A stretch of DNA of 58,733 bases, the filler included, from Platydemus manokwari (taxonomy: Eukaryota), in the NCBI GenBank assembly GCA_037951405.1. It is 5 parts of 5 records of this genome, joined end to end, with 100 filler letters (N's around TTAATTAATTAA, not from the genome) between each part and the next. Parts side by side here need not be neighbours in the genome. Positions count along the whole stretch, not along the records: positions 38,335 to 48,102 come from JBBMOY011207321.1; 4 more parts are not named here. The stretch is one strand, 5' to 3'. The position numbers were made by a program, and so were the translations under genes. The number at the start of each line of letters is the position of its first letter. The stretch's first letter is position 1. The notes beneath the pieces were generated by a model. The model was given only the letters and a program-made list of their open reading frames with translations. It was not told the DNA's origin and did not search any database. Shown here one piece after another: positions 38,335 to 48,102 of the stretch.

Positions 38335-38950
38335 TTTTTAAGCGAGTTATAGTCTTTTAAAGTTGCTGTTAGATAACGGCCATTATTTTTGCACCAACCT
38401 AATATTATTTTGAATCCGATTTGCAGAAATTATGAACAATTCGCGCATAGTTATGAAATATATACAAGTGGTGGTATGTTGTGATATGCGGGGCAGCCGC
38501 GTATGTTCAATACAACCAAGAATTAATGAAATTCTAATGAACATCAAGAATGAGAAGCAGTTTAAATGATAGAATTATTGTTCAGTGATGACATTTTCAA
38601 ATGGATTAGGCTTAGGAAATAAAAGCAATGAAAATAAAAAATTAAAGAATGCCAGCTAAAGAGGATTCTGATTCAGAAAAGTTTAAAAGAATTGAAATAT
38701 TAAAAGTAATGACAAAATCAGATGAATTGACTTAAGGTGTCTCTGTTGACTGTGAAATGAAAGTAAACATAATAAAACATTATTTATTAATGTGTCCGAC
38801 TTCATTAAATAACTGGTTTTTGTAAATGTCAAATTATCAGTGAGTGACATGTCACATTTGGAGATTAAGACTCACTTTAAATAACATTTTAAAAGTGGAT
38901 AATCTTTATATCTTCCCTAATTCAAAATATAAGATACACACACATACATA

Positions 38951-40138
38951 CAGTCAACCATCATTAATCCGAAAAAAATAGAAATCGATTTCCTTTCGAA
39001 TTGTGAATCAACTCGTATAATGAAGTAATTTAAAATCTAAAAGATCGCCGTATTAATGATGAAATTATTAAGAAAAAGACAATTATTTATTTAAAAAATC
39101 ATCTAAAGTTTTTTATAGAGTTTTAATTTGAATAAATTTCAGTAAATCAACTTTGGCCTCTTTTAAATTTTTTTGTGTCATTGGTTATTTTTTAAGTAGA
39201 GCTGCGTGAAGAAGAACTTGCTTTGATGACAATTTCAATTGCATGGAATAAATTGCTTGGACTTATGTTGTAACTGTCATCGACCTGACCATCTTCAGTA
39301 CTAAGTACAGCATCTTCAACAGTATATTCTTCTTGACACAGTGCAATAATTCTATCATCATCAATGACTTCTTCTGTTTGGATAATATCATCTTCAACCA
39401 TTATTTGGTCAAGCTCATTCTTGTGTGTCTCAAAAACAGGATCTGATGACAAGTTTTCTTCAGCATAAGATCCGTGAAGACCAGGAATAAAACGCAGTTT
39501 TTTTGAAACATATTTTGAAGGTTTCTTTTTTCACATCTTCCCAAACCTCATCAATATGCTTTCTTAAAATTAACAATAAAGGCTTTTGTTTGGTCAAGCG
39601 AGTTCATGTAGTCAACAACTACCTTTTTCTATAATAATGCTTTAAATTTGTTATAATATCTGCATTCATGGGTTGAAGATGATCAATGAAGTTCTTCGGA
39701 AGCATTAAAACTTCAATGTTCTGAAAACATTTCTTCAAGCTATGATTTGGAGAGTTATCAAGAAGTAGACAAAATTTATTTTTGTCTTTTCGAAGTTCAT
39801 CATCAAGGTGCAGCAAAAAACAATTAAACAAATAAGTAGTCACCCATGCTTTCGAATTTGCGTGGAATTTGCAGTACCATGCAACATTAAATCCTTTAAA
39901 ACATCTTGCTTTCTTATTGTGTCCAATAACAAAGTGTATAATTTTAATTGATCTACTAGAATTTGAACATAAAGCTATAGTTTTTCTAAACAATCTATTG
40001 TCTTATGCCTTTTCTTTGCGGACCATGAAGTTTCAGAACAATGAATGAAATTTGTTTGGAAACATTCGAAAATTGACGAAATATATGATTTTTTTCGTAT
40101 TTCTGGTTATTAAAGTTCGGATTAACGAGAGTTGACTG
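38951..40138 (-). mobile_element. internally deleted pogo/Tigger DNA transposon with both TIRs
   Basis: 23-bp TIRs CAGTCAACCATCATTAATCCGAA and TTCGGATTAACGAGAGTTGACTG match at 20/23, with TA on both flanks. The internal disrupted DDE_1 transposase reads NSKAWVT...LLLDNSPNH...LPKN...LQPMNADII, followed by an acidic tail. Confidence 0.9.
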
Positions 40139-40534
40139 TATATATATTTAAAGTATCACCTAAACATTGCTAATGTTCTATCCTAATGATTTTAAAATTA
40201 GTATTAAGAAATGACAAGGTATATATATTCATGCGATTGTTAGGCTTGAAATAAATATCATAATTATTTTTGAGGGTTTCTAAATCAATTAACATTTAAA
40301 TAATCATTTTAAATTGAAAATATATCCATATCAAATATTATAAATGATAATTTGAATTAGATTGTCTTTCATTTCATGTTCTATGAAATAGTAGCTGCTA
40401 ACGTGATGATTTTTTATTTAAGGATAACTAAATTTATAATATTAATATTAAGATTATTCTCATGAAAATGATAATGCAAATAAAAATAATTTATATCCTC
40501 AATTTACAACAATAATAATTTTTTTAAATAAAAG

Positions 40535-43500
40535 CATCGCCATCATTTTCCAAAACAATGCGCAAATTTCAAATAATGAACATTAATCGACAAGGATATA
40601 TTCGTTGTTGCATGGTCGGCGTGACGAGCATAACATGGTGGGTGAAGCCAAAGAAAACGAAAGAACCATTCAAAGAAATACTGCCATTAAAGGGAAAATA
40701 CAGAATTGAATCAAGAAATAGGTCATTGACAATTTTAACTGTAATTGTTTTTTATATTATCATTTCGATCATGTCGATCTATCATATCTCTGTATCATGT
40801 CTCTCTGTTATATCTGTCTATCATGTCTCTATCATATTTCTATATTATATCAATTCAATCATATTTTAAGCTGAAGGACGAGAAAAACCATTTGACTTTC
40901 AAATGCATTGGCAGAGATAAAAGGAATCAAACTATTGAAGGTCGAACTAATGTAACGCTTGGTGAGATTTCAATATTAATATCAAACATTAATATAACTT
41001 ACTTATAAACAATATTAATGGATTTATTTGGCTACATTTGCGTTTATGTATATTGTTGTAAATATATTTTTATGGTTTAGTTAAAACGAAACAATCGAAA
41101 GGCATTAGAATTATAAGCCGTTCAGATAAAGGAAAAATGATTTTCAAGGTCAAATCAAATCAAACTCTTTTCTGTACGGTAAAAGTAATTATTAAATTCA
41201 ATTGTAGGTTTTCATGGAATCGACTAATAAATGGTGAATATAAATCGATTTTGAATTCAACTTTTTTGGAGCATTTCAAAAAAAATTCATCACTCATAGA
41301 AGGATACAATGGTTGGAGTTCTCTTGTTATCAAGTATTCTTAGCATTTTGTTTCCATTATTGTGTCATATTCGACTTTATAAGACAATCGAACTCGATTA
41401 ATATTATCGCACGGTTTTCAGTAAAATTGTGATTTAAACAGAACTCACTGTAATACTCCTAATTATGACCAACAAACTGAATGAAATGATGAATGTTAGA
41501 ATTGCCAAAACATATTGACAATATTAAACTAAACTAATGGATTTTAGACTAGTGTGATATTAATCGAGTTGAGTTGAAATTTCATTTTCTATAAGATTTG
41601 TTATACATGTCAACTTATTTGATGTATCTTATGTCAGCCAAAGAATTTAGTAAATCCTTGATTTGCTTGTTTGAAACAAGAAATATTTACATTGATGGTA
41701 TATAATGAGTTATGTTTGATATACCGTTTTGCAGACGTTTCAAAGAAGAACATTATACTTACAATTTCACAATCACATTTTTCAATATAAAAGAAGAGGA
41801 TGAAGGTTTTTATAGTTGCCTGATTAAAGAGACGAATGAGAAAGATGTATCGATTTTTCAAATATACATTCAACATATGAGTGAGTTGATTTTATGTTTG
41901 GGTTTAATAAAATAAATTTTAATAAAAATCGAAACATTGCAATATTAGAAGAACTATTCAATGTTAAGCTTATTTAGTAAACTTATTCACTTCGTCCAAG
42001 ACCTGGTTTTAATGATTATTGTCATGAACTTGAATTATAATTCATCCAGCACTTGAATTAACACAGCAATAGTTATAATATCGAAACTATAGAGTATCAC
42101 TTAAAATATTATATTTCATGGTCTAAAGGATACGAATTCAACAAATACTAGTGATGGGAATTAACGTCATTTGTCTCTAATCTTAAGAGCTGCTTAAAAA
42201 ATTCTGAGTATAGAAGGCTGACTGATATTCGAATTTGAAAGTTCGTCGAATTTTTATAATCTGATTTTTATTGCTTACAAATTTACCATTGAAATAAAAT
42301 AAAAAATTGCAACAAATGACAGTGAAATAGCCTGTTGTCATTAAATGAAGACTTTTGTGTTGAAATTCTCATTCTGAGTCTTTCACAGTGGGATTTGGAT
42401 TCATATCTCTAGATTTGTCGGTTGGTTTATTTGATTTATATAAATTTAGAATATAGCTGCATTATAGTTTTTCATTAAACTGGTCACGGTTTAATGGTTT
42501 GCATATTTTACTTAGCGTTCTTGTTACTCATTTAGTTCAATAAAACCGCCAAGTAGTCCAATCACGTATAAAATGTTACATAAATAAATCAACTAAGTTC
42601 ACGAAAATGAAAAATCGAATACCAAATCGTTTTCAAACCCCCAATAAATGCGTTATAAAAATATTTGAATTACTTTTCGTGATTTTAAAATTTTTACCAA
42701 TTTCATAAATGTATTTTCTAGAGCCCAGCAAAATATATTTTACACTGCCAATGGTATTTCCGATGGTTTTCATTGTAATGTTGATGTATGTTTTCAAATG
42801 CGATTTGGTGATCCTCATTAAATACGCTTGTCGGACGATCTTGAGAACAGGTGATAACATTACTGTATCATATAATCTTTTAAAAATCGCACGGTCTGTT
42901 CACCGGTATTTATTAAAGACCATAATCTTATTAAAACAGAAATGATAAGAGTAAATTTATTCAGGATACTTTGACAAATATCATCAAGTCAGAGACTTTG
43001 TATACTTTGCATGATCATATAGTGGATCATATGTCGATAAGAGAAGATTTAAAAGTTGAATCACTCTCGGTTTTTTCATTTTTTACTACTTAGTGCTTTT
43101 TAAAGCCAAGATTGCAATGATCATGCCTTCAGAGATGATATAACATTGTCAGAAACCTTTACAATTTCAACGGATATTAAAAGATGCTCAGGATAATATT
43201 ACAATTATATAAAAAAGTCACCGATTTATAGAAAACTTGTTTTACTTAACAGACTATTAAAAATCATTTTCGAATAGGAATTTCCTTTGAAATAATATTA
43301 TAATTTGTTACACAAACCAATGATAATTCTATAATTAGCTTTCTAATGGATTTGAACTCACTGCTAACTCACTCAAGTTAATATCAATTGAGACAATCAT
43401 GGTAATTTATTTTTAATATGATATCACCATGTATCTCACAATGGCATATTCATCCGACTTAATCATGTATTGCAATATACCGGTACAAATCAGGACGATG

Positions 43501-45708
43501 TTTTGAAAATTTTATATCTATATCTATATCTCATATGTTTTACTTTAAGTATTACTTTCAGAAAAACCTAAAGACAGATACGATTTTTTCTTTATTTACG
43601 ACTTCGATCACGAGGAAATCTTCAAAACGGTTTTGGAAGTTATTAATAAGCTAAAAGATCAAGGGTGTAACTCGTACTTTCATCACAGGGATCAAATGTA
43701 TGGGAAAAGTAATGCTTTAATATTGAATAGAATTGAGCAAATAAACAAAGTAACCCTTGGAATGGAATAATTATTTGATGAAAACCATAAAATGAAGATG
43801 TATATTTTAAAGGAATAGAAAAGGATAACAAATTCAAATTTGAATGTTAAACAAGGATAATTATATGAGTTGACTAATTATAGGGAACAGGAAAAGCACA
43901 ACTGTATTCGATATAGCGATTATAAATCAATTTAAATTTAATAAGTGACACACATTTAAATTTTCTTTTATGTTTCTGCAAATTTTAAAATTAGTCCTTT
44001 TTAATTTTATTTTTAATTTAATTTATTTATTACTGATATTCAATAATCGATAGAATGGCTTTAACAAGTAAATATATCGTGATTATTGTTTACAATATAA
44101 TATAAATAATACTCTTTACATTACAAATCAGCAGACATTTGATGATTCACTAATTCAAAACGGTGTATCGATGTCAAACAATTATTTAAACAAATATATC
44201 ACCAACTTAAAATTGACAATCATATTTCAATTCTAATTAATCGATTTTAATTATATAATCGCTAAATAACTGTATAACTATACTTCAATTTTAATAACTG
44301 ATCTATTGATTTATAATTTGAAAATTTATTAAAATTTATTTCAAATCATTATTAAAATTAAGTAACTATTGCAAATTTTAAGTCGTTGCTTTATTCCGAT
44401 TTTTACATTTGTTGGGTTATCATGAAACAACATAGATCTGAAATTTTCTATTAACTATAATATTACACCAAAAGTCTAAACGACAACAGCAAATCTTTTC
44501 AGAATACTCAAGATGGGAACAGCAACCGAAAGTCAAAAACTGAATGAAAATTAATCAAAAACAATGATTATTAAAATCACACATAAGCTAAGCGCTCAAG
44601 TTACCGACCCAAAAGACTGGGAAGAATCCATAGAACTCAACTTCTTCTGTAGTCATAAAAGTTGTGTCTGCTTGATGTCCCGGATCTTCGCTTTCATTAA
44701 CTGAATTTATATATGGATCGATTTACTTGAGATTTTCTTTACATCTCTCGTATCATTGGCGGATATTGGAGCTTGCTGCCATTTGTAGGTATGTGCACGT
44801 TGATTAATATGGATTAACATCAGAATAAATCCGATTACTTAACGACATGTGTGTTCATCGGGTATGTGTGTATTGACCTTTTTTGGGGTTCTTTCCTTGT
44901 TTTTTGTGACCATTTTAATTGATTTTTATTGATCTACTTAGACCTTATTTTGTTATTCATAATCGCATATGAACTTTCAAAATTTAACGACATAGTTCTC
45001 AAATAAAAATATTATAACTAAATCATATTTTATGTTAAATAGAGACCTTGTAGTGTCTTCAAAGTTTGATGAGGTTAAAAGTGAGATGTTGCTTCCAACA
45101 AAATCTTCTATTTTCTCTGTCTAAAGCCTTATGTAGCCATTAAAAAATTTCTGAAGTCCATTTCCAATAAATGAAACTCTTATCAAATTCAAGTCCAATT
45201 TTTTCAGTGAAAGTCACTTGATGTCATTTTATCGTTATGACTATATTATGGAATTGAATAAAGTAATTATTGATTTCTTTTCTCTTAGATGTATTAGAAA
45301 ATATGATCGATAATCTCGCTAAAAGCGATATTATCGTCTGTTATGTATCCAATGGGATTTGGCAGAATGCAACTTGTAATTTCTGTATTCAAATGTCTAT
45401 AAAGGGGTATCCTAAAAAGAAAAGATTATATATTATCACAGAGAATAAGAAATCGGCTATGGAACGATGTGGAAAGTTTATATTTCTATTAATATTTTCG
45501 ACTATTTCGTTTAAATTTGATTTTCAGCAAAATCGTATTGATGGATACAAAATCATGCATGACATCGAAAGTGATTGTGTGGAATCCAGATAATGTAGAT
45601 GGAAAACAACCTGGTTTACTCAAAATATGGTATTGGCATCGAGTTTTATCGTGGCTTATATCGACACTACCTGTGTTACAATACGAATCTTATAAAGGAA
45701 TGCAGTAG
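40535..45708 (+). CDS. IL-1-receptor-like protein: two Ig domains, transmembrane helix, TIR domain (5' signal-peptide exon not identified)
   Basis: Phase-consistent GT-AG exons are 40535-40740, 40871-40961, 41081-41311 (or -41333), optional 41384-41420, 41735-41880, 42722-42850, 43562-43708, 45289-45475 and 45528-45708. Ig motifs are C..ITWW..SLTI..FKC and FC..FSW..DEGFYSC. The TM is IYFTLPMVFPMVFIVMLMYVF. The TIR reads YDFFFIY...YFHHRDQMYGKNVLENMIDNLAKS..IVCYVS...W...YW..LP. AATAAA is at 45807. Confidence 0.82.
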
Positions 45709-46586
45709 AATAATTTAAAAAATCAAAAAAATAACGCTCAATAATTTTTAAATTTTTTTTAAATATTTTTTTAATAATAAAATTTTTAAACTTTATTTAT
45801 TTATTAAATAAAAGACATAATTTCATCACACCAAATAATATATATTTATTTTACAATTTTTTTAAAACAAACTTTCGATTATTATTAACATTCTTTAAAA
45901 ATAAAAAGTAAAATTTAAATTTTTAAAATGATATTTCAAACATATTTTTTTTGAGAGGTGATAGAGGAATACATTTTAAAACTTTTTGCTGGATTTGAAA
46001 TACATTTGGGTATAATCGTAGTATTAAATTCTCTTAAGCGAAATTCCATTCAGCATTTACTCTACTGTTGAGTTATGTTGTTAAATTTTATCTCGTTTAA
46101 AATTAGTTTCGAAATTTCCGTTTTTAGCATCATTTAGAACATATTCACATATGCATAATAACAGCTCGCACATTCATTTTTGTACATTAATATTAAATAG
46201 CTTGCAATGGCCAATCTAAGATAGTTTGAATTTTTACAAGTTAGACCCAAAAGAAACAGTACTCGTGTTAGTAGCGGCAACTTCACTTGCAATTGATCTT
46301 TCAACAAAAAATTATAATTTCAGAGAGTTTTAATGTCAATTTTCTTTAAAGCTATTATTTAAAATAATGATTTTAAAATTACTTAAACATTATTTTAAAT
46401 TATTTTGAAAATTTTTTACCTTCATTTTTCATCTTTTATAATTCTCGCCGCTTACTCCTTTTTGTTTTATTTATTTTTTTATAATACTCTTGTAATCTTT
46501 TATATAATTTTATACATTATAAAAAAATTGACAAGAAATTTATAAAAATAACAATAAAATTGTGTATACCAAGTTTTATCGTTTCT

Positions 46587-47176: not shown

Positions 47177-47585
47177 TCAACCAGAAATTGAATACATCTG
47201 TTCACTTTTAATTAATATTTCAACAGTTTTTTCTTCTAATACACAACACTGAGCTTTGTATTTCCAACCGGAAGATTTTTCAATTCCAACTTTTACTGTA
47301 TATCTTTTTATTACTTATTTTTCATCTTTAGTTTTTACATCGAAACAAAATATTGAATATAAATTCTGAAAATGTATTTTACTGAATTGATGATAATTAT
47401 TGCATTTTTTACATAAATTAAGATATGCATCATTAAGGCCATCCTGATTAATTATTGTGAAATCAAATTGCATTCTATTGGTTGGAAAGTATCTATTACC
47501 ATTTACTATAACTTGTCATGATTTCATATATTTATCATTAGCAATATTTTGAATGAATTTTGAATTATTTTTAGTTAAGGTAATA
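47177..47585 (-). pseudogene. second Polinton/adintovirus major capsid C-terminal remnant
   Basis: KNNSKF...DKYMKS*QVIVNGNRYFPTNRMQFD...NQDGLNDAYLNLCK...NLYSIFCFDVKTKDEK...KAQCCVLEEKTVEILIK is colinear with the remnant at 30100-30506. Confidence 0.75.
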
Positions 47586-48102
47586 AGGTGTTGCTTTTCA
47601 AAATATTTCTCTATATCAGATGAAAAATTTTCATTTACTGCCATTTCTTCAACCACTTCGCCGAAACCAGCATGCCTAAAACAATTTTTTATGGTATTAC
47701 AGCTAACTTTTGACCAAGCCATTTTAACCATGCTAATTGCATCAAGAATACTTACTTTAAATTTTTCTTCTGGATAGGAATCATAAAAATGAATCATTTT
47801 TGTAACAATTCCTTTTTTATAATACTGCTTAAAAGCATTGATAACCCCGGCATCTAAAGGCTGTAACTTACTTGTAGTATTTGGAGGCATAAAAATCAAC
47901 TCAATATTTGTTAAAGATTGACCTAACGGAAGATGGGAAGAACAATTGTCTACTAATAAAATAATATTTCTTCCAATTTTTCTTAATTTAGAATCCCATG
48001 ACATAATCCAATTTGAAAAAATTGTTGATGTCATCCATGCATTCTGATTGTTTTTATAATTTAGGGAAGTAATATCAACATTTTTAAAACATCGGGGATT
48101 TT
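47586..48102 (-). mobile_element. pogo/Tigger DDE_1 transposase fragment (5' cut by contig end)
   Basis: PRCFK...NQNAWMTSTIF...ILLVDNCSSH...MPPNTTSKLQPLDAGVINAFK...AWSKVS...IKNCFRHAGF. Confidence 0.9.

What the first reader, a model, noticed from the sequence alone, without database searches (positions are those of the whole stretch)
40535..45708. Hidden multi-exon Ig-Ig-TM-TIR gene: an IL-1-receptor-like immune receptor in an invertebrate
Seen: eight or nine small exons, which the ORF track shows only as unrelated fragments (the first TIR exon 43562-43708 is absent from it), join through canonical GT-AG sites. Every splice phase matches and there is no internal stop. The ~450-aa product has Ig1 (RCCMVGVTSITWW...RSLTILT...TFKC), Ig2 (LFCTVK...FSW...NFTITFFNIKEEDEGFYSC), a hydrophobic helix, a juxtamembrane YVFKCDLVILIKY, and a TIR (box1 YDFFFIY, box2 HHRDQMYG, NVLENMIDNLAKS, terminal W...YW...LP). 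Established: Ig-TM-TIR is the architecture of the vertebrate IL-1R family, whose juxtamembrane has a similar F-K-x-D-I/L-V-L pattern. Ig-TIR receptors also occur in sponges and cnidarians, while IL-1 cytokines are a vertebrate feature. Inference: this is a receptor for an unknown ligand in an uncharacterised invertebrate (probably flatworm) innate-immune or developmental pathway.
Basis: partly seen in the sequence, partly recalled or inferred. Interest (0 to 1): 0.92.

Follow-up and report, generated by a model that had tools for sequence, protein, structure and literature searches.

The report
Split Ig-Ig-TM-TIR receptor gene
The window holds an intact eight-exon animal gene for a membrane receptor with two immunoglobulin-like domains outside the cell and a Toll/IL-1-receptor (TIR) signalling domain inside; this receptor type is already known from sponges to vertebrates, but this lineage has almost no detectable relatives.

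Summary
Eight GT-AG exons on the + strand (40558-45708) join into an open 438-codon frame.

The only detectable relative among 1.84 billion proteins lies on an intron-poor, transcript-like contig (L001). That contig carries the same Ig1-Ig2-TM-TIR order, colinear with the model at 45% identity. It keeps one unspliced intron at exactly the position of window intron 3.

- **Ig2:** the exon 4 piece passes Pfam's ig threshold.
- **Ig1:** supported only by language-model features and a moderate predicted fold.
- **TIR:** a two-sequence profile hits only TIR domains at the top of the PDB (E 4e-4). Pfam TIR models are sub-threshold. The low-confidence fold model matches TIR clusters.

Not shown: expression of this locus, the signal-peptide exon (probably missing upstream), the organism, and any special kinship with vertebrate IL-1R. 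The best sequence matches are TLR-type TIRs.

Verdict: a real gene, a new and divergent member of the known IgTIR (IL-1R-like) receptor type. It is of moderate interest, and more so if the host is a flatworm or rotifer.

The parts
40535..40740 (+). Exon 1 of the model: Ig1 strands A to E. The first ATG is at 40558. An AG acceptor at 40533-40534 makes 40535 the likely exon start.
   Evidence: Open frame and GT donor at 40741. tblastn with the relative gives E 4e-14. The relative's contig L001 begins at the base homologous to 40535, and the residues upstream of the ATG are conserved (xPxFS[KR]xM).
40871..40961 (+). Exon 2: Ig1 strands F and G (LTFKC).
   Evidence: AG/GT borders, phase 0 to 1. 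Colinear with L001. Ig fold of the homologous domain.
41081..41333 (+). Exon 3: linker and the first part of Ig2 (LFCTVKVIIKFNCRFSW).
   Evidence: Removing 41185-41207 breaks the frame; reading through keeps it. tblastn E 4e-15. L001 retains an intron at exactly the position of the donor at 41334.
41735..41880 (+). Exon 4: Ig2 strands E to G (NFTITFFNIKEEDEGFYSC).
   Evidence: Pfam PF00047 ig: E 8.5e-5, 23.2 bits, above the gathering score of 21.8. V-set and I-set also match. 63% identical to the relative.
42722..42850 (+). Exon 5: the single transmembrane helix (aa 229-250) and the basic juxtamembrane stretch (FKCDLVILIKYACRTILRT).
   Evidence: Highest Kyte-Doolittle 19-residue windows, 2.2-2.5. 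Phase 1 to 1 with AG/GT borders. Only 22% identical to the relative and not found alone by tblastn.
43562..43708 (+). Exon 6: TIR strand A, helix A, strand B and the BB loop (box 1 YDFFFIY, box 2 HHRDQMYG).
   Evidence: Atlas features point to SEFIR/TIR_2 clusters at 0.92-0.93. tblastn E 5e-17. Part of profile A2, which hits TIR domains.
45289..45475 (+). Exon 7: TIR helix B, strand C, helix C and strand D (NVLENMIDNLAKSDIIVCYVS).
   Evidence: Atlas features point to TIR_2 clusters at 0.92. 60% identical to P0001, E 6e-17. Aligns to the TLR2 and Hydra TRR2 TIR core.
45528..45708 (+). Exon 8: TIR strand E and helix E with box 3 (IWYWHRVLSWLISTLP), then the TAG stop at 45706-45708.
   Evidence: AG acceptor, frame closes at TAG. 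tblastn E 1.9e-15.
45776..45812 (+). AATAAA polyadenylation-like signals at 45776 and 45807, about 70-100 nt after the stop.
   Evidence: Pattern search. The sequence is AT-rich, so this is weak evidence.

Best explanation
This is a real, probably functional, protein-coding gene of an AT-rich animal genome. It encodes a single-pass membrane receptor with two divergent Ig-like domains, one transmembrane helix, a short basic juxtamembrane stretch and a C-terminal TIR domain. That is the IgTIR, or IL-1R-like, architecture.

Shown: the gene structure, the open frame, the domain assignments, and the same exon joining in a spliced transcript-like contig of a relative.

Inferred: an upstream exon, outside the model, supplies the signal peptide. 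The glycosylated Ig domains then face outwards and bind an unknown ligand or partner. Receptor pairing brings the TIR domains together, and these act as a scaffold for a TIR adaptor such as MyD88 rather than as an NAD-cleaving enzyme. The reason for the last point is that the position aligned to the conserved Glu of TLR2 (YEL) is Cys in both family members.
For: - **Gene model:** eight exons, all GT-AG, 438 open codons. The chance of such an open frame is about 3e-17.
- **Relative:** among 1.84e9 proteins the only hit is P0001, at E 6e-17. It lies on the 1511-nt contig L001, which carries Ig1, Ig2, TM and TIR without introns at six of the seven homologous junctions. L001 keeps one unspliced GT..AG intron exactly at window intron 3.
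- **Exon recovery:** colinear tblastn HSPs at E 4e-14 to 4.5e-22.
- **Ig2:** Pfam ig above threshold.
- **TIR by sequence:** Pfam TIR and TIR_2 on P0001 at E 0.006. phmmer top hit TLR2 TIR. Profile A2: top nine PDB hits all TIR, best E 4.2e-4.
- **TIR by features:** Atlas features of exons 6 and 7 taken separately.
- **Topology:** one hydrophobic segment, with 7 N-X-S/T sites before it and 1 after it.
Against: - There is no RNA evidence for this locus. The only run that holds it looks like DNA.
- There is no signal peptide at the modelled N-terminus, and no convincing upstream exon in the piece. The best candidate, 40085-40130, lies inside a transposon end and has a weak donor.
- Pfam TIR scores are below the gathering thresholds, and single TIR exons hit nothing in Pfam or the PDB.
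- The TIR model has low confidence (pLDDT 51), and other flavodoxin-like folds score nearly as well.
- Ig1 is invisible to Pfam and to PDB sequence searches.
- Synonymous sites are saturated, so purifying selection could not be measured.
- The joined window protein itself could not be given to Pfam or to structure prediction, because it has no reference.
Confidence: 0.75

Rival explanations
1. The locus is an unexpressed or recently dead copy (pseudogene) of an IgTIR gene. The working family member would be the one seen as transcript L001 or another paralogue.
For: No RNA run holds this locus. The 5' signal exon is missing from the model, and a pogo-type transposon sits 400 nt upstream of exon 1. 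A high-copy repeat lies in intron 6.
Against: All 438 codons are open in AT-rich DNA where a stop is expected about every 12 codons. All seven introns keep GT-AG. Conservation is domain-shaped: TIR 57%, Ig about 40%, TM 22%.
Confidence: 0.12
2. The gene is real, but the protein works as a cell-adhesion or synapse-organising molecule, or as a developmental receptor, as IL1RAPL1 does in vertebrates. Alternatively it is a signalling damper like SIGIRR. In either case it would not be an immune sensor.
For: The ectodomain is two generic Ig domains with no identifiable ligand. The BB-loop proline is replaced by Tyr (RDQMYG) in both members. Vertebrate family members with one or two Ig domains (SIGIRR, DIGIRR) are inhibitory, and IL-1R9/10 are brain orphans (PMC9020223).
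Against: Nothing here discriminates between these roles. No expression pattern or partner is known.
Confidence: 0.3
3. The C-terminal domain is an enzymatic (NAD-cleaving) TIR, as in SARM1 and in plant and bacterial TIRs. The protein would then signal through a small molecule or by NAD depletion.
For: The best structural matches include plant NLR, SPARTA, AbTir and ThsB-type TIRs. A 2026 preprint reports catalytic activity of diverse animal TIRs (10.64898/2026.04.20.719644; abstract only seen).
Against: In the HMMER alignment to TLR2, the position of the conserved Glu (YEL) is Cys in the window protein and in P0001. The structural ranking rests on a low-confidence model.
Confidence: 0.08

Closest known systems
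Invertebrate IgTIR / IL-1R-like receptors (Amphimedon AmqIgTIR, cnidarian IL-1R-like, and protostome and amphioxus homologues)
   Same: Extracellular Ig domains, one membrane span and a cytoplasmic TIR. No IL-1 cytokine is known in these animals. The literature places such genes in Porifera, Cnidaria, Protostomia and Deuterostomia (PMC9020223, PMC11087794, PMC6043800).
   Different: No sequence of that group was retrieved by any search here. The only detectable relative is one unannotated transcript contig, so kinship with any named IgTIR is not shown. The architecture could also have arisen by separate domain shuffling.
Vertebrate IL-1 receptor family (IL-1R1, IL-1RAcP, IL-18R, ST2, SIGIRR, DIGIRR)
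   Same: Ig-TM-TIR order. Boxes 1, 2 and 3 of the TIR are recognisable. There are two Ig domains, as in fish DIGIRR (PMC9020223). A basic-x-D-hydrophobic juxtamembrane stretch recalls FKIDIVLWY of IL-1R1; this is from memory and was not tested.
TLR1/2-type TIR domains and Hydra Toll-receptor-related 2 (TRR2)
   Same: These are the best sequence matches of the TIR core, from strand B to helix C: 4w8h E 4.2e-4, 1fyx E 5.9e-4, 7nuw E 0.003.
   Different: TLRs carry leucine-rich repeats, and TRR2 has almost no ectodomain. Here the ectodomain is two Ig domains. The BB-loop Pro of TLR2 is Tyr here.

Membership tests
TIR domain superfamily (Pfam clan STIR; PF01582/PF13676) | Significant profile match over the domain | tested here: inconclusive
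   Pfam on the 57%-identical relative P0001: TIR 16.8 bits (gathering score 21.3) and TIR_2 17.6 bits (gathering score 28), E about 0.006. Single window exons give nothing. A two-sequence profile against PDB sequences gives TIR domains as the top nine hits, best E 4.2e-4. The joined window protein could not be submitted to Pfam.
TIR domain superfamily (Pfam clan STIR; PF01582/PF13676) | Flavodoxin-like five-stranded beta-alpha fold that matches solved TIR domains | tested here: met
TIR domain superfamily (Pfam clan STIR; PF01582/PF13676) | Box 1, box 2 (RD..G BB loop) and box 3 (W-containing) motifs in order | tested here: met
   YDFFFIY, HHRDQMYGK and IWYWHRVLSWLISTLP are read directly in the translation. 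All three are conserved in P0001. Box 2 aligns to RDFIHGK of TLR2. The BB-loop Pro is Tyr.
IgTIR / IL-1R-like receptor architecture | One or more extracellular Ig-superfamily domains | tested here: met
IgTIR / IL-1R-like receptor architecture | Single transmembrane segment between the Ig and TIR parts, on one transcript | tested here: met
   One hydrophobic segment at aa 229-250. The relative's transcript-like contig carries Ig2b, TM and TIR in one frame (P0001). For the window locus itself the joining is a model only.
IgTIR / IL-1R-like receptor architecture | Signal peptide giving type I topology | tested here: not met
   The modelled N-terminus (MRKFQIMNINRQGY...) has none. No convincing upstream exon lies in the piece. 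Conservation upstream of the ATG, and the relative's contig ending at the exon border, suggest a missing 5' exon. The gene model is therefore incomplete; this does not show that the feature is absent.
Vertebrate IL-1 receptor family proper | TIR domain closer to IL-1R-family TIRs than to TLR or adaptor TIRs | tested here: not met
   Profile search of PDB sequences: TLR1/2/6/15 and Hydra TRR2 are listed, and no IL-1R-family chain appears at E up to 10. IL-1RAcPb TIR (7fcc) is in the library and ranks 37th by structure. This is a ranking, not a phylogeny.
Vertebrate IL-1 receptor family proper | Binds an IL-1-family beta-trefoil cytokine with an accessory chain | not testable with these tools
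   No ligand gene can be searched for in this genome with the tools at hand.
Vertebrate IL-1 receptor family proper | Conserved juxtamembrane motif (F-K-x-D-I-V-L-W-Y) | not testable with these tools
   The window has FKCDLVILIKY and the relative has LRYDVKIFMKY. The PDB search with exon 5 found no chain. The comparison with IL-1R1 rests on memory only.

The most novel reading that the evidence does not exclude
The host may be a flatworm or a rotifer. These phyla are reported to lack TLRs, and in Schmidtea no TIR domain was found linked to an Ig or LRR domain (PMC7958881). If so, this gene and its transcript-supported relative would be the first Ig-linked TIR receptors of such a phylum. They would have been overlooked because both Ig1 and the TIR fall below Pfam thresholds, and they would be a candidate for the missing surface receptor upstream of MyD88 there.
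Probability: 0.2. Interest if true: 0.7.

Novelty: new member of a known kind. Interest (0 to 1): 0.5.

Why it matters
Ig-TM-TIR receptors are older than their only known ligands, the vertebrate IL-1 cytokines. What they bind in invertebrates is an open question. This lineage is so divergent that standard domain scans miss two of its three domains. Surveys that report 'no Ig-linked TIR' in some phyla may therefore be undercounting.

A defined eight-exon model, together with a transcript from a relative, gives a concrete target for cloning, localisation, knock-down and ligand fishing. The value depends on which animal this is, and that could not be established here.

Tried and rejected
**Gene model**
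- The nine-exon model with a 23-nt intron at 41185-41207 breaks the frame.
- Candidate signal-peptide exons upstream: the only hydrophobic one (40085-40130, MIFFVFLVI...) lies inside the terminal inverted repeat of a pogo element and has a GTTGAC donor. It was rejected.
- A trans-spliced leader at the 40535 acceptor was considered. It would give no signal peptide, and the residues upstream of the ATG are conserved in frame, so an ordinary upstream exon is more likely. This is not settled.

**Searches that gave nothing**
- Pfam on single TIR exons and on Ig1.
- phmmer of single exons against the PDB, and of the Ig1 profile or ectodomain.
- More family members with P0001 and with profile A2: only P0001 itself was found.

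**Measurements that failed or were unavailable**
- dN/dS against the relative: synonymous sites are saturated, so no value.
- RNA evidence: the one run that holds the locus is contigs that cover the introns at even depth, that is DNA-like, with no splice joints.

**Organism identity, not obtained**
- The run accession appears in no paper.
- A window ORF is not on record.
- Relatives of the transposase are uninformative.

- The joined 438-aa protein was not sent to Pfam, structure prediction or the protein databases.
- For the same reason no TIR phylogeny with IL-1R, TLR and MyD88 sequences was built.
Full report
**1. The observation**

I rebuilt the gene from the sequence. With the proposed 23-nt intron at 41185-41207 removed, the frame collapses into stops.

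Reading that stretch through gives eight exons:
- 40558-40740
- 40871-40961
- 41081-41333
- 41735-41880
- 42722-42850
- 43562-43708
- 45289-45475
- 45528-45708

All seven introns (52 to 1580 nt, 19-28% G+C) begin with GT and end with AG. The phases fit, and the 1317 joined bases give 438 codons ending in TAG. From the base composition of the locus a stop is expected about every 12 codons, so the chance of 438 open codons is about 3e-17.

**2. Independent support from a relative**

A full HMMER scan of 1.84 billion representative proteins with exon 7 (61 aa) found one protein, P0001 (297 aa, 60% identical, E 6e-17). Word-indexed searches with P0001 and with a profile found nothing else, so the family is very thinly represented in public data.

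P0001 is encoded on a 1511-nt Logan contig of run SRR21676451 (L001). Reading L001 shows four parts:
- an upstream frame with Ig1 and the first part of Ig2;
- an 87-nt stretch with GT..AG ends (554-640);
- the frame of P0001 with the rest of Ig2, the membrane segment and the TIR;
- a stop and a 3' end with AATAAA.

With the 87 nt removed, the 455-aa product aligns with the window model from end to end with almost no gaps. Overall identity is 45%: TIR 57%, Ig1 40%, Ig2 41%, membrane/juxtamembrane 22%.

The retained intron sits exactly at window intron 3 and in the same phase. The other six window junctions are continuous in L001. L001 is therefore best read as a partly spliced transcript of an orthologue or paralogue. 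It shows that in this family the Ig exons really are joined to the TM and TIR exons.

A tblastn of that product against the whole piece, which uses no knowledge of my model, recovers these exons in order on the + strand:
- exon 1: E 4e-14
- exons 2+3: E 4e-15
- exon 4: E 3e-12
- exon 6: E 5e-17
- exon 7: E 4.5e-22
- exon 8: E 1.9e-15

Nothing else significant is found. Exon 5 is too divergent to be found alone. It rests on its hydrophobic content, its phases, and the shared KPSK and KY residues.

**3. The domains**

*Ig2.* The 48-aa exon 4 piece alone passes Pfam's ig gathering score (23.2 against 21.8 bits, E 8.5e-5) and also matches V-set and I-set.

*Ig1.* Pfam and PDB sequence searches see nothing. 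Other evidence does support it:
- The domain has the Cys...Trp...Cys spacing.
- Language-model features of the relative's Ig1 give an ig cluster at 0.95 with 175 shared features, and all ten best families are in the Ig clan.
- An AlphaFold model (pLDDT 64) has seven strands.

I take Ig1 as a divergent Ig-like domain, with less certainty than Ig2.

*Membrane segment.* There is one hydrophobic stretch, aa 229-250. Seven N-X-S/T sites precede it and one follows it.

*TIR.*
- Single exons give no Pfam or PDB hit.
- Exons 6 and 7, tested separately, both land on TIR_2/SEFIR clusters by features (0.92-0.93).
- P0001 matches Pfam TIR and TIR_2 at E about 0.006, below the gathering scores.
- Its TIR region has the TLR2 TIR as best PDB sequence hit.
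- A profile of P0001 plus window exons 6-8 raises this to E 4.2e-4 (Hydra TRR2), 5.9e-4 (TLR2) and 0.003 (TLR1). The top nine hits are all TIR domains.
- The AlphaFold model is poor (pLDDT 51) but shows the beta-alpha x5 order.
- Foldseek gives a mix of flavodoxin-like folds rich in TIRs.
- All ten rows of the ESM-Atlas fold search are TIR clusters.

No single line is strong, however, and the joined window protein itself could not be submitted.

**4. What is missing**

*The N-terminus.* It has no signal peptide. The frame cannot extend beyond a TAA at 40525. An AG at 40533-40534 makes 40535 a likely exon start.

L001 begins at exactly the homologous base, and the eight residues before the ATG are conserved in frame. 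This points to an upstream coding exon that neither sequence shows.

The only hydrophobic candidate in the piece lies inside the end of a pogo-type transposon, so I reject it. That element has inverted repeats at 38944-38973 and 40116-40145 and broken DDE_1 frames.

*Expression of this locus.* It is untested. The single run that holds it covers the introns evenly and shows no splice joints.

**5. Mechanism**

Shown: the architecture.

Inferred from what is established for TLR and IL-1R signalling:
- ligand- or partner-driven pairing of the ectodomains brings the TIR domains together;
- the paired TIR domains nucleate a TIR adaptor such as MyD88.

The aligned position of the conserved Glu of TLR2 (YEL), which is the catalytic Glu in NAD-cleaving TIRs, is Cys in both members. 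I therefore favour a scaffold role over an enzymatic one. The BB-loop Pro is Tyr in both, which leaves open a damping role like that of SIGIRR. Nothing here decides between an immune, developmental or neuronal role.

**6. Comparison with what is known**

Ig-TM-TIR genes are already described in sponges, cnidarians, protostomes and deuterostomes, in the absence of IL-1 (PMC9020223, PMC11087794, PMC6043800). The kind is therefore known.

Membership of the vertebrate IL-1R family proper is not supported. The nearest TIRs by sequence are TLR-type. No IL-1R-family TIR reached E 10, although IL-1RAcPb is in the library. The juxtamembrane likeness could not be tested.

I file the gene as a new, divergent member of the IgTIR architecture class.

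The literature also says that rotifers and flatworms lack TLRs. It says that none of 20 Schmidtea TIR proteins is linked to an Ig or LRR domain (PMC7958881). If the host belongs to one of these phyla, the gene would matter more. Its invisibility to Pfam would also explain why such genes were missed.

**7. Verdict**

The IL-1R label should be read as 'same architecture', not 'same family'. Interest is moderate.

Noticed in passing
window 38944-40145: A decayed pogo/Tigger-type DNA transposon of about 1.2 kb lies about 400 nt upstream of exon 1. It has 30-nt terminal inverted repeats (87% complementary, CAGTCAAC...TTAATCCGAA) flanked by TA. On the minus strand it carries broken DDE_1 frames (39619-39993, E 7.5e-25).
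   Followed up: partly
window 47516-48034 (- strand), running to the piece's right edge: A second DDE_1 (pogo/Tigger) transposase remnant: 172-aa ORF, Pfam E 1.6e-28. Its nearest database relatives are at most 48% identical and come from widely scattered eukaryotes.
   Followed up: partly
window about 44514-44860 (intron 6): A stretch with contig depth of 1500-2400 in the one DNA-like run, against about 14 for the rest of the gene. It is therefore a repeat with on the order of a hundred copies in that genome. It is 36% G+C, has no Rfam or Pfam match, and many contigs break or diverge inside it.
   Followed up: no
window 40765-40851 (intron 1): A tandem array of about six copies of a 13-nt unit (TCTATCATRTCTC-like).
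   Followed up: no
L001 554-640: The relative's contig retains one 87-nt GT..AG intron, with in-frame stops, at exactly the position and phase of window intron 3 (401 nt). This is a conserved intron position, and it indicates that the contig comes from partly spliced RNA.
   Followed up: yes
L001 1-2 and window 40535: The relative's contig starts at the very base that follows the AG acceptor in the window. This could be an assembly break at an exon junction, or a trans-splice site.
   Followed up: partly
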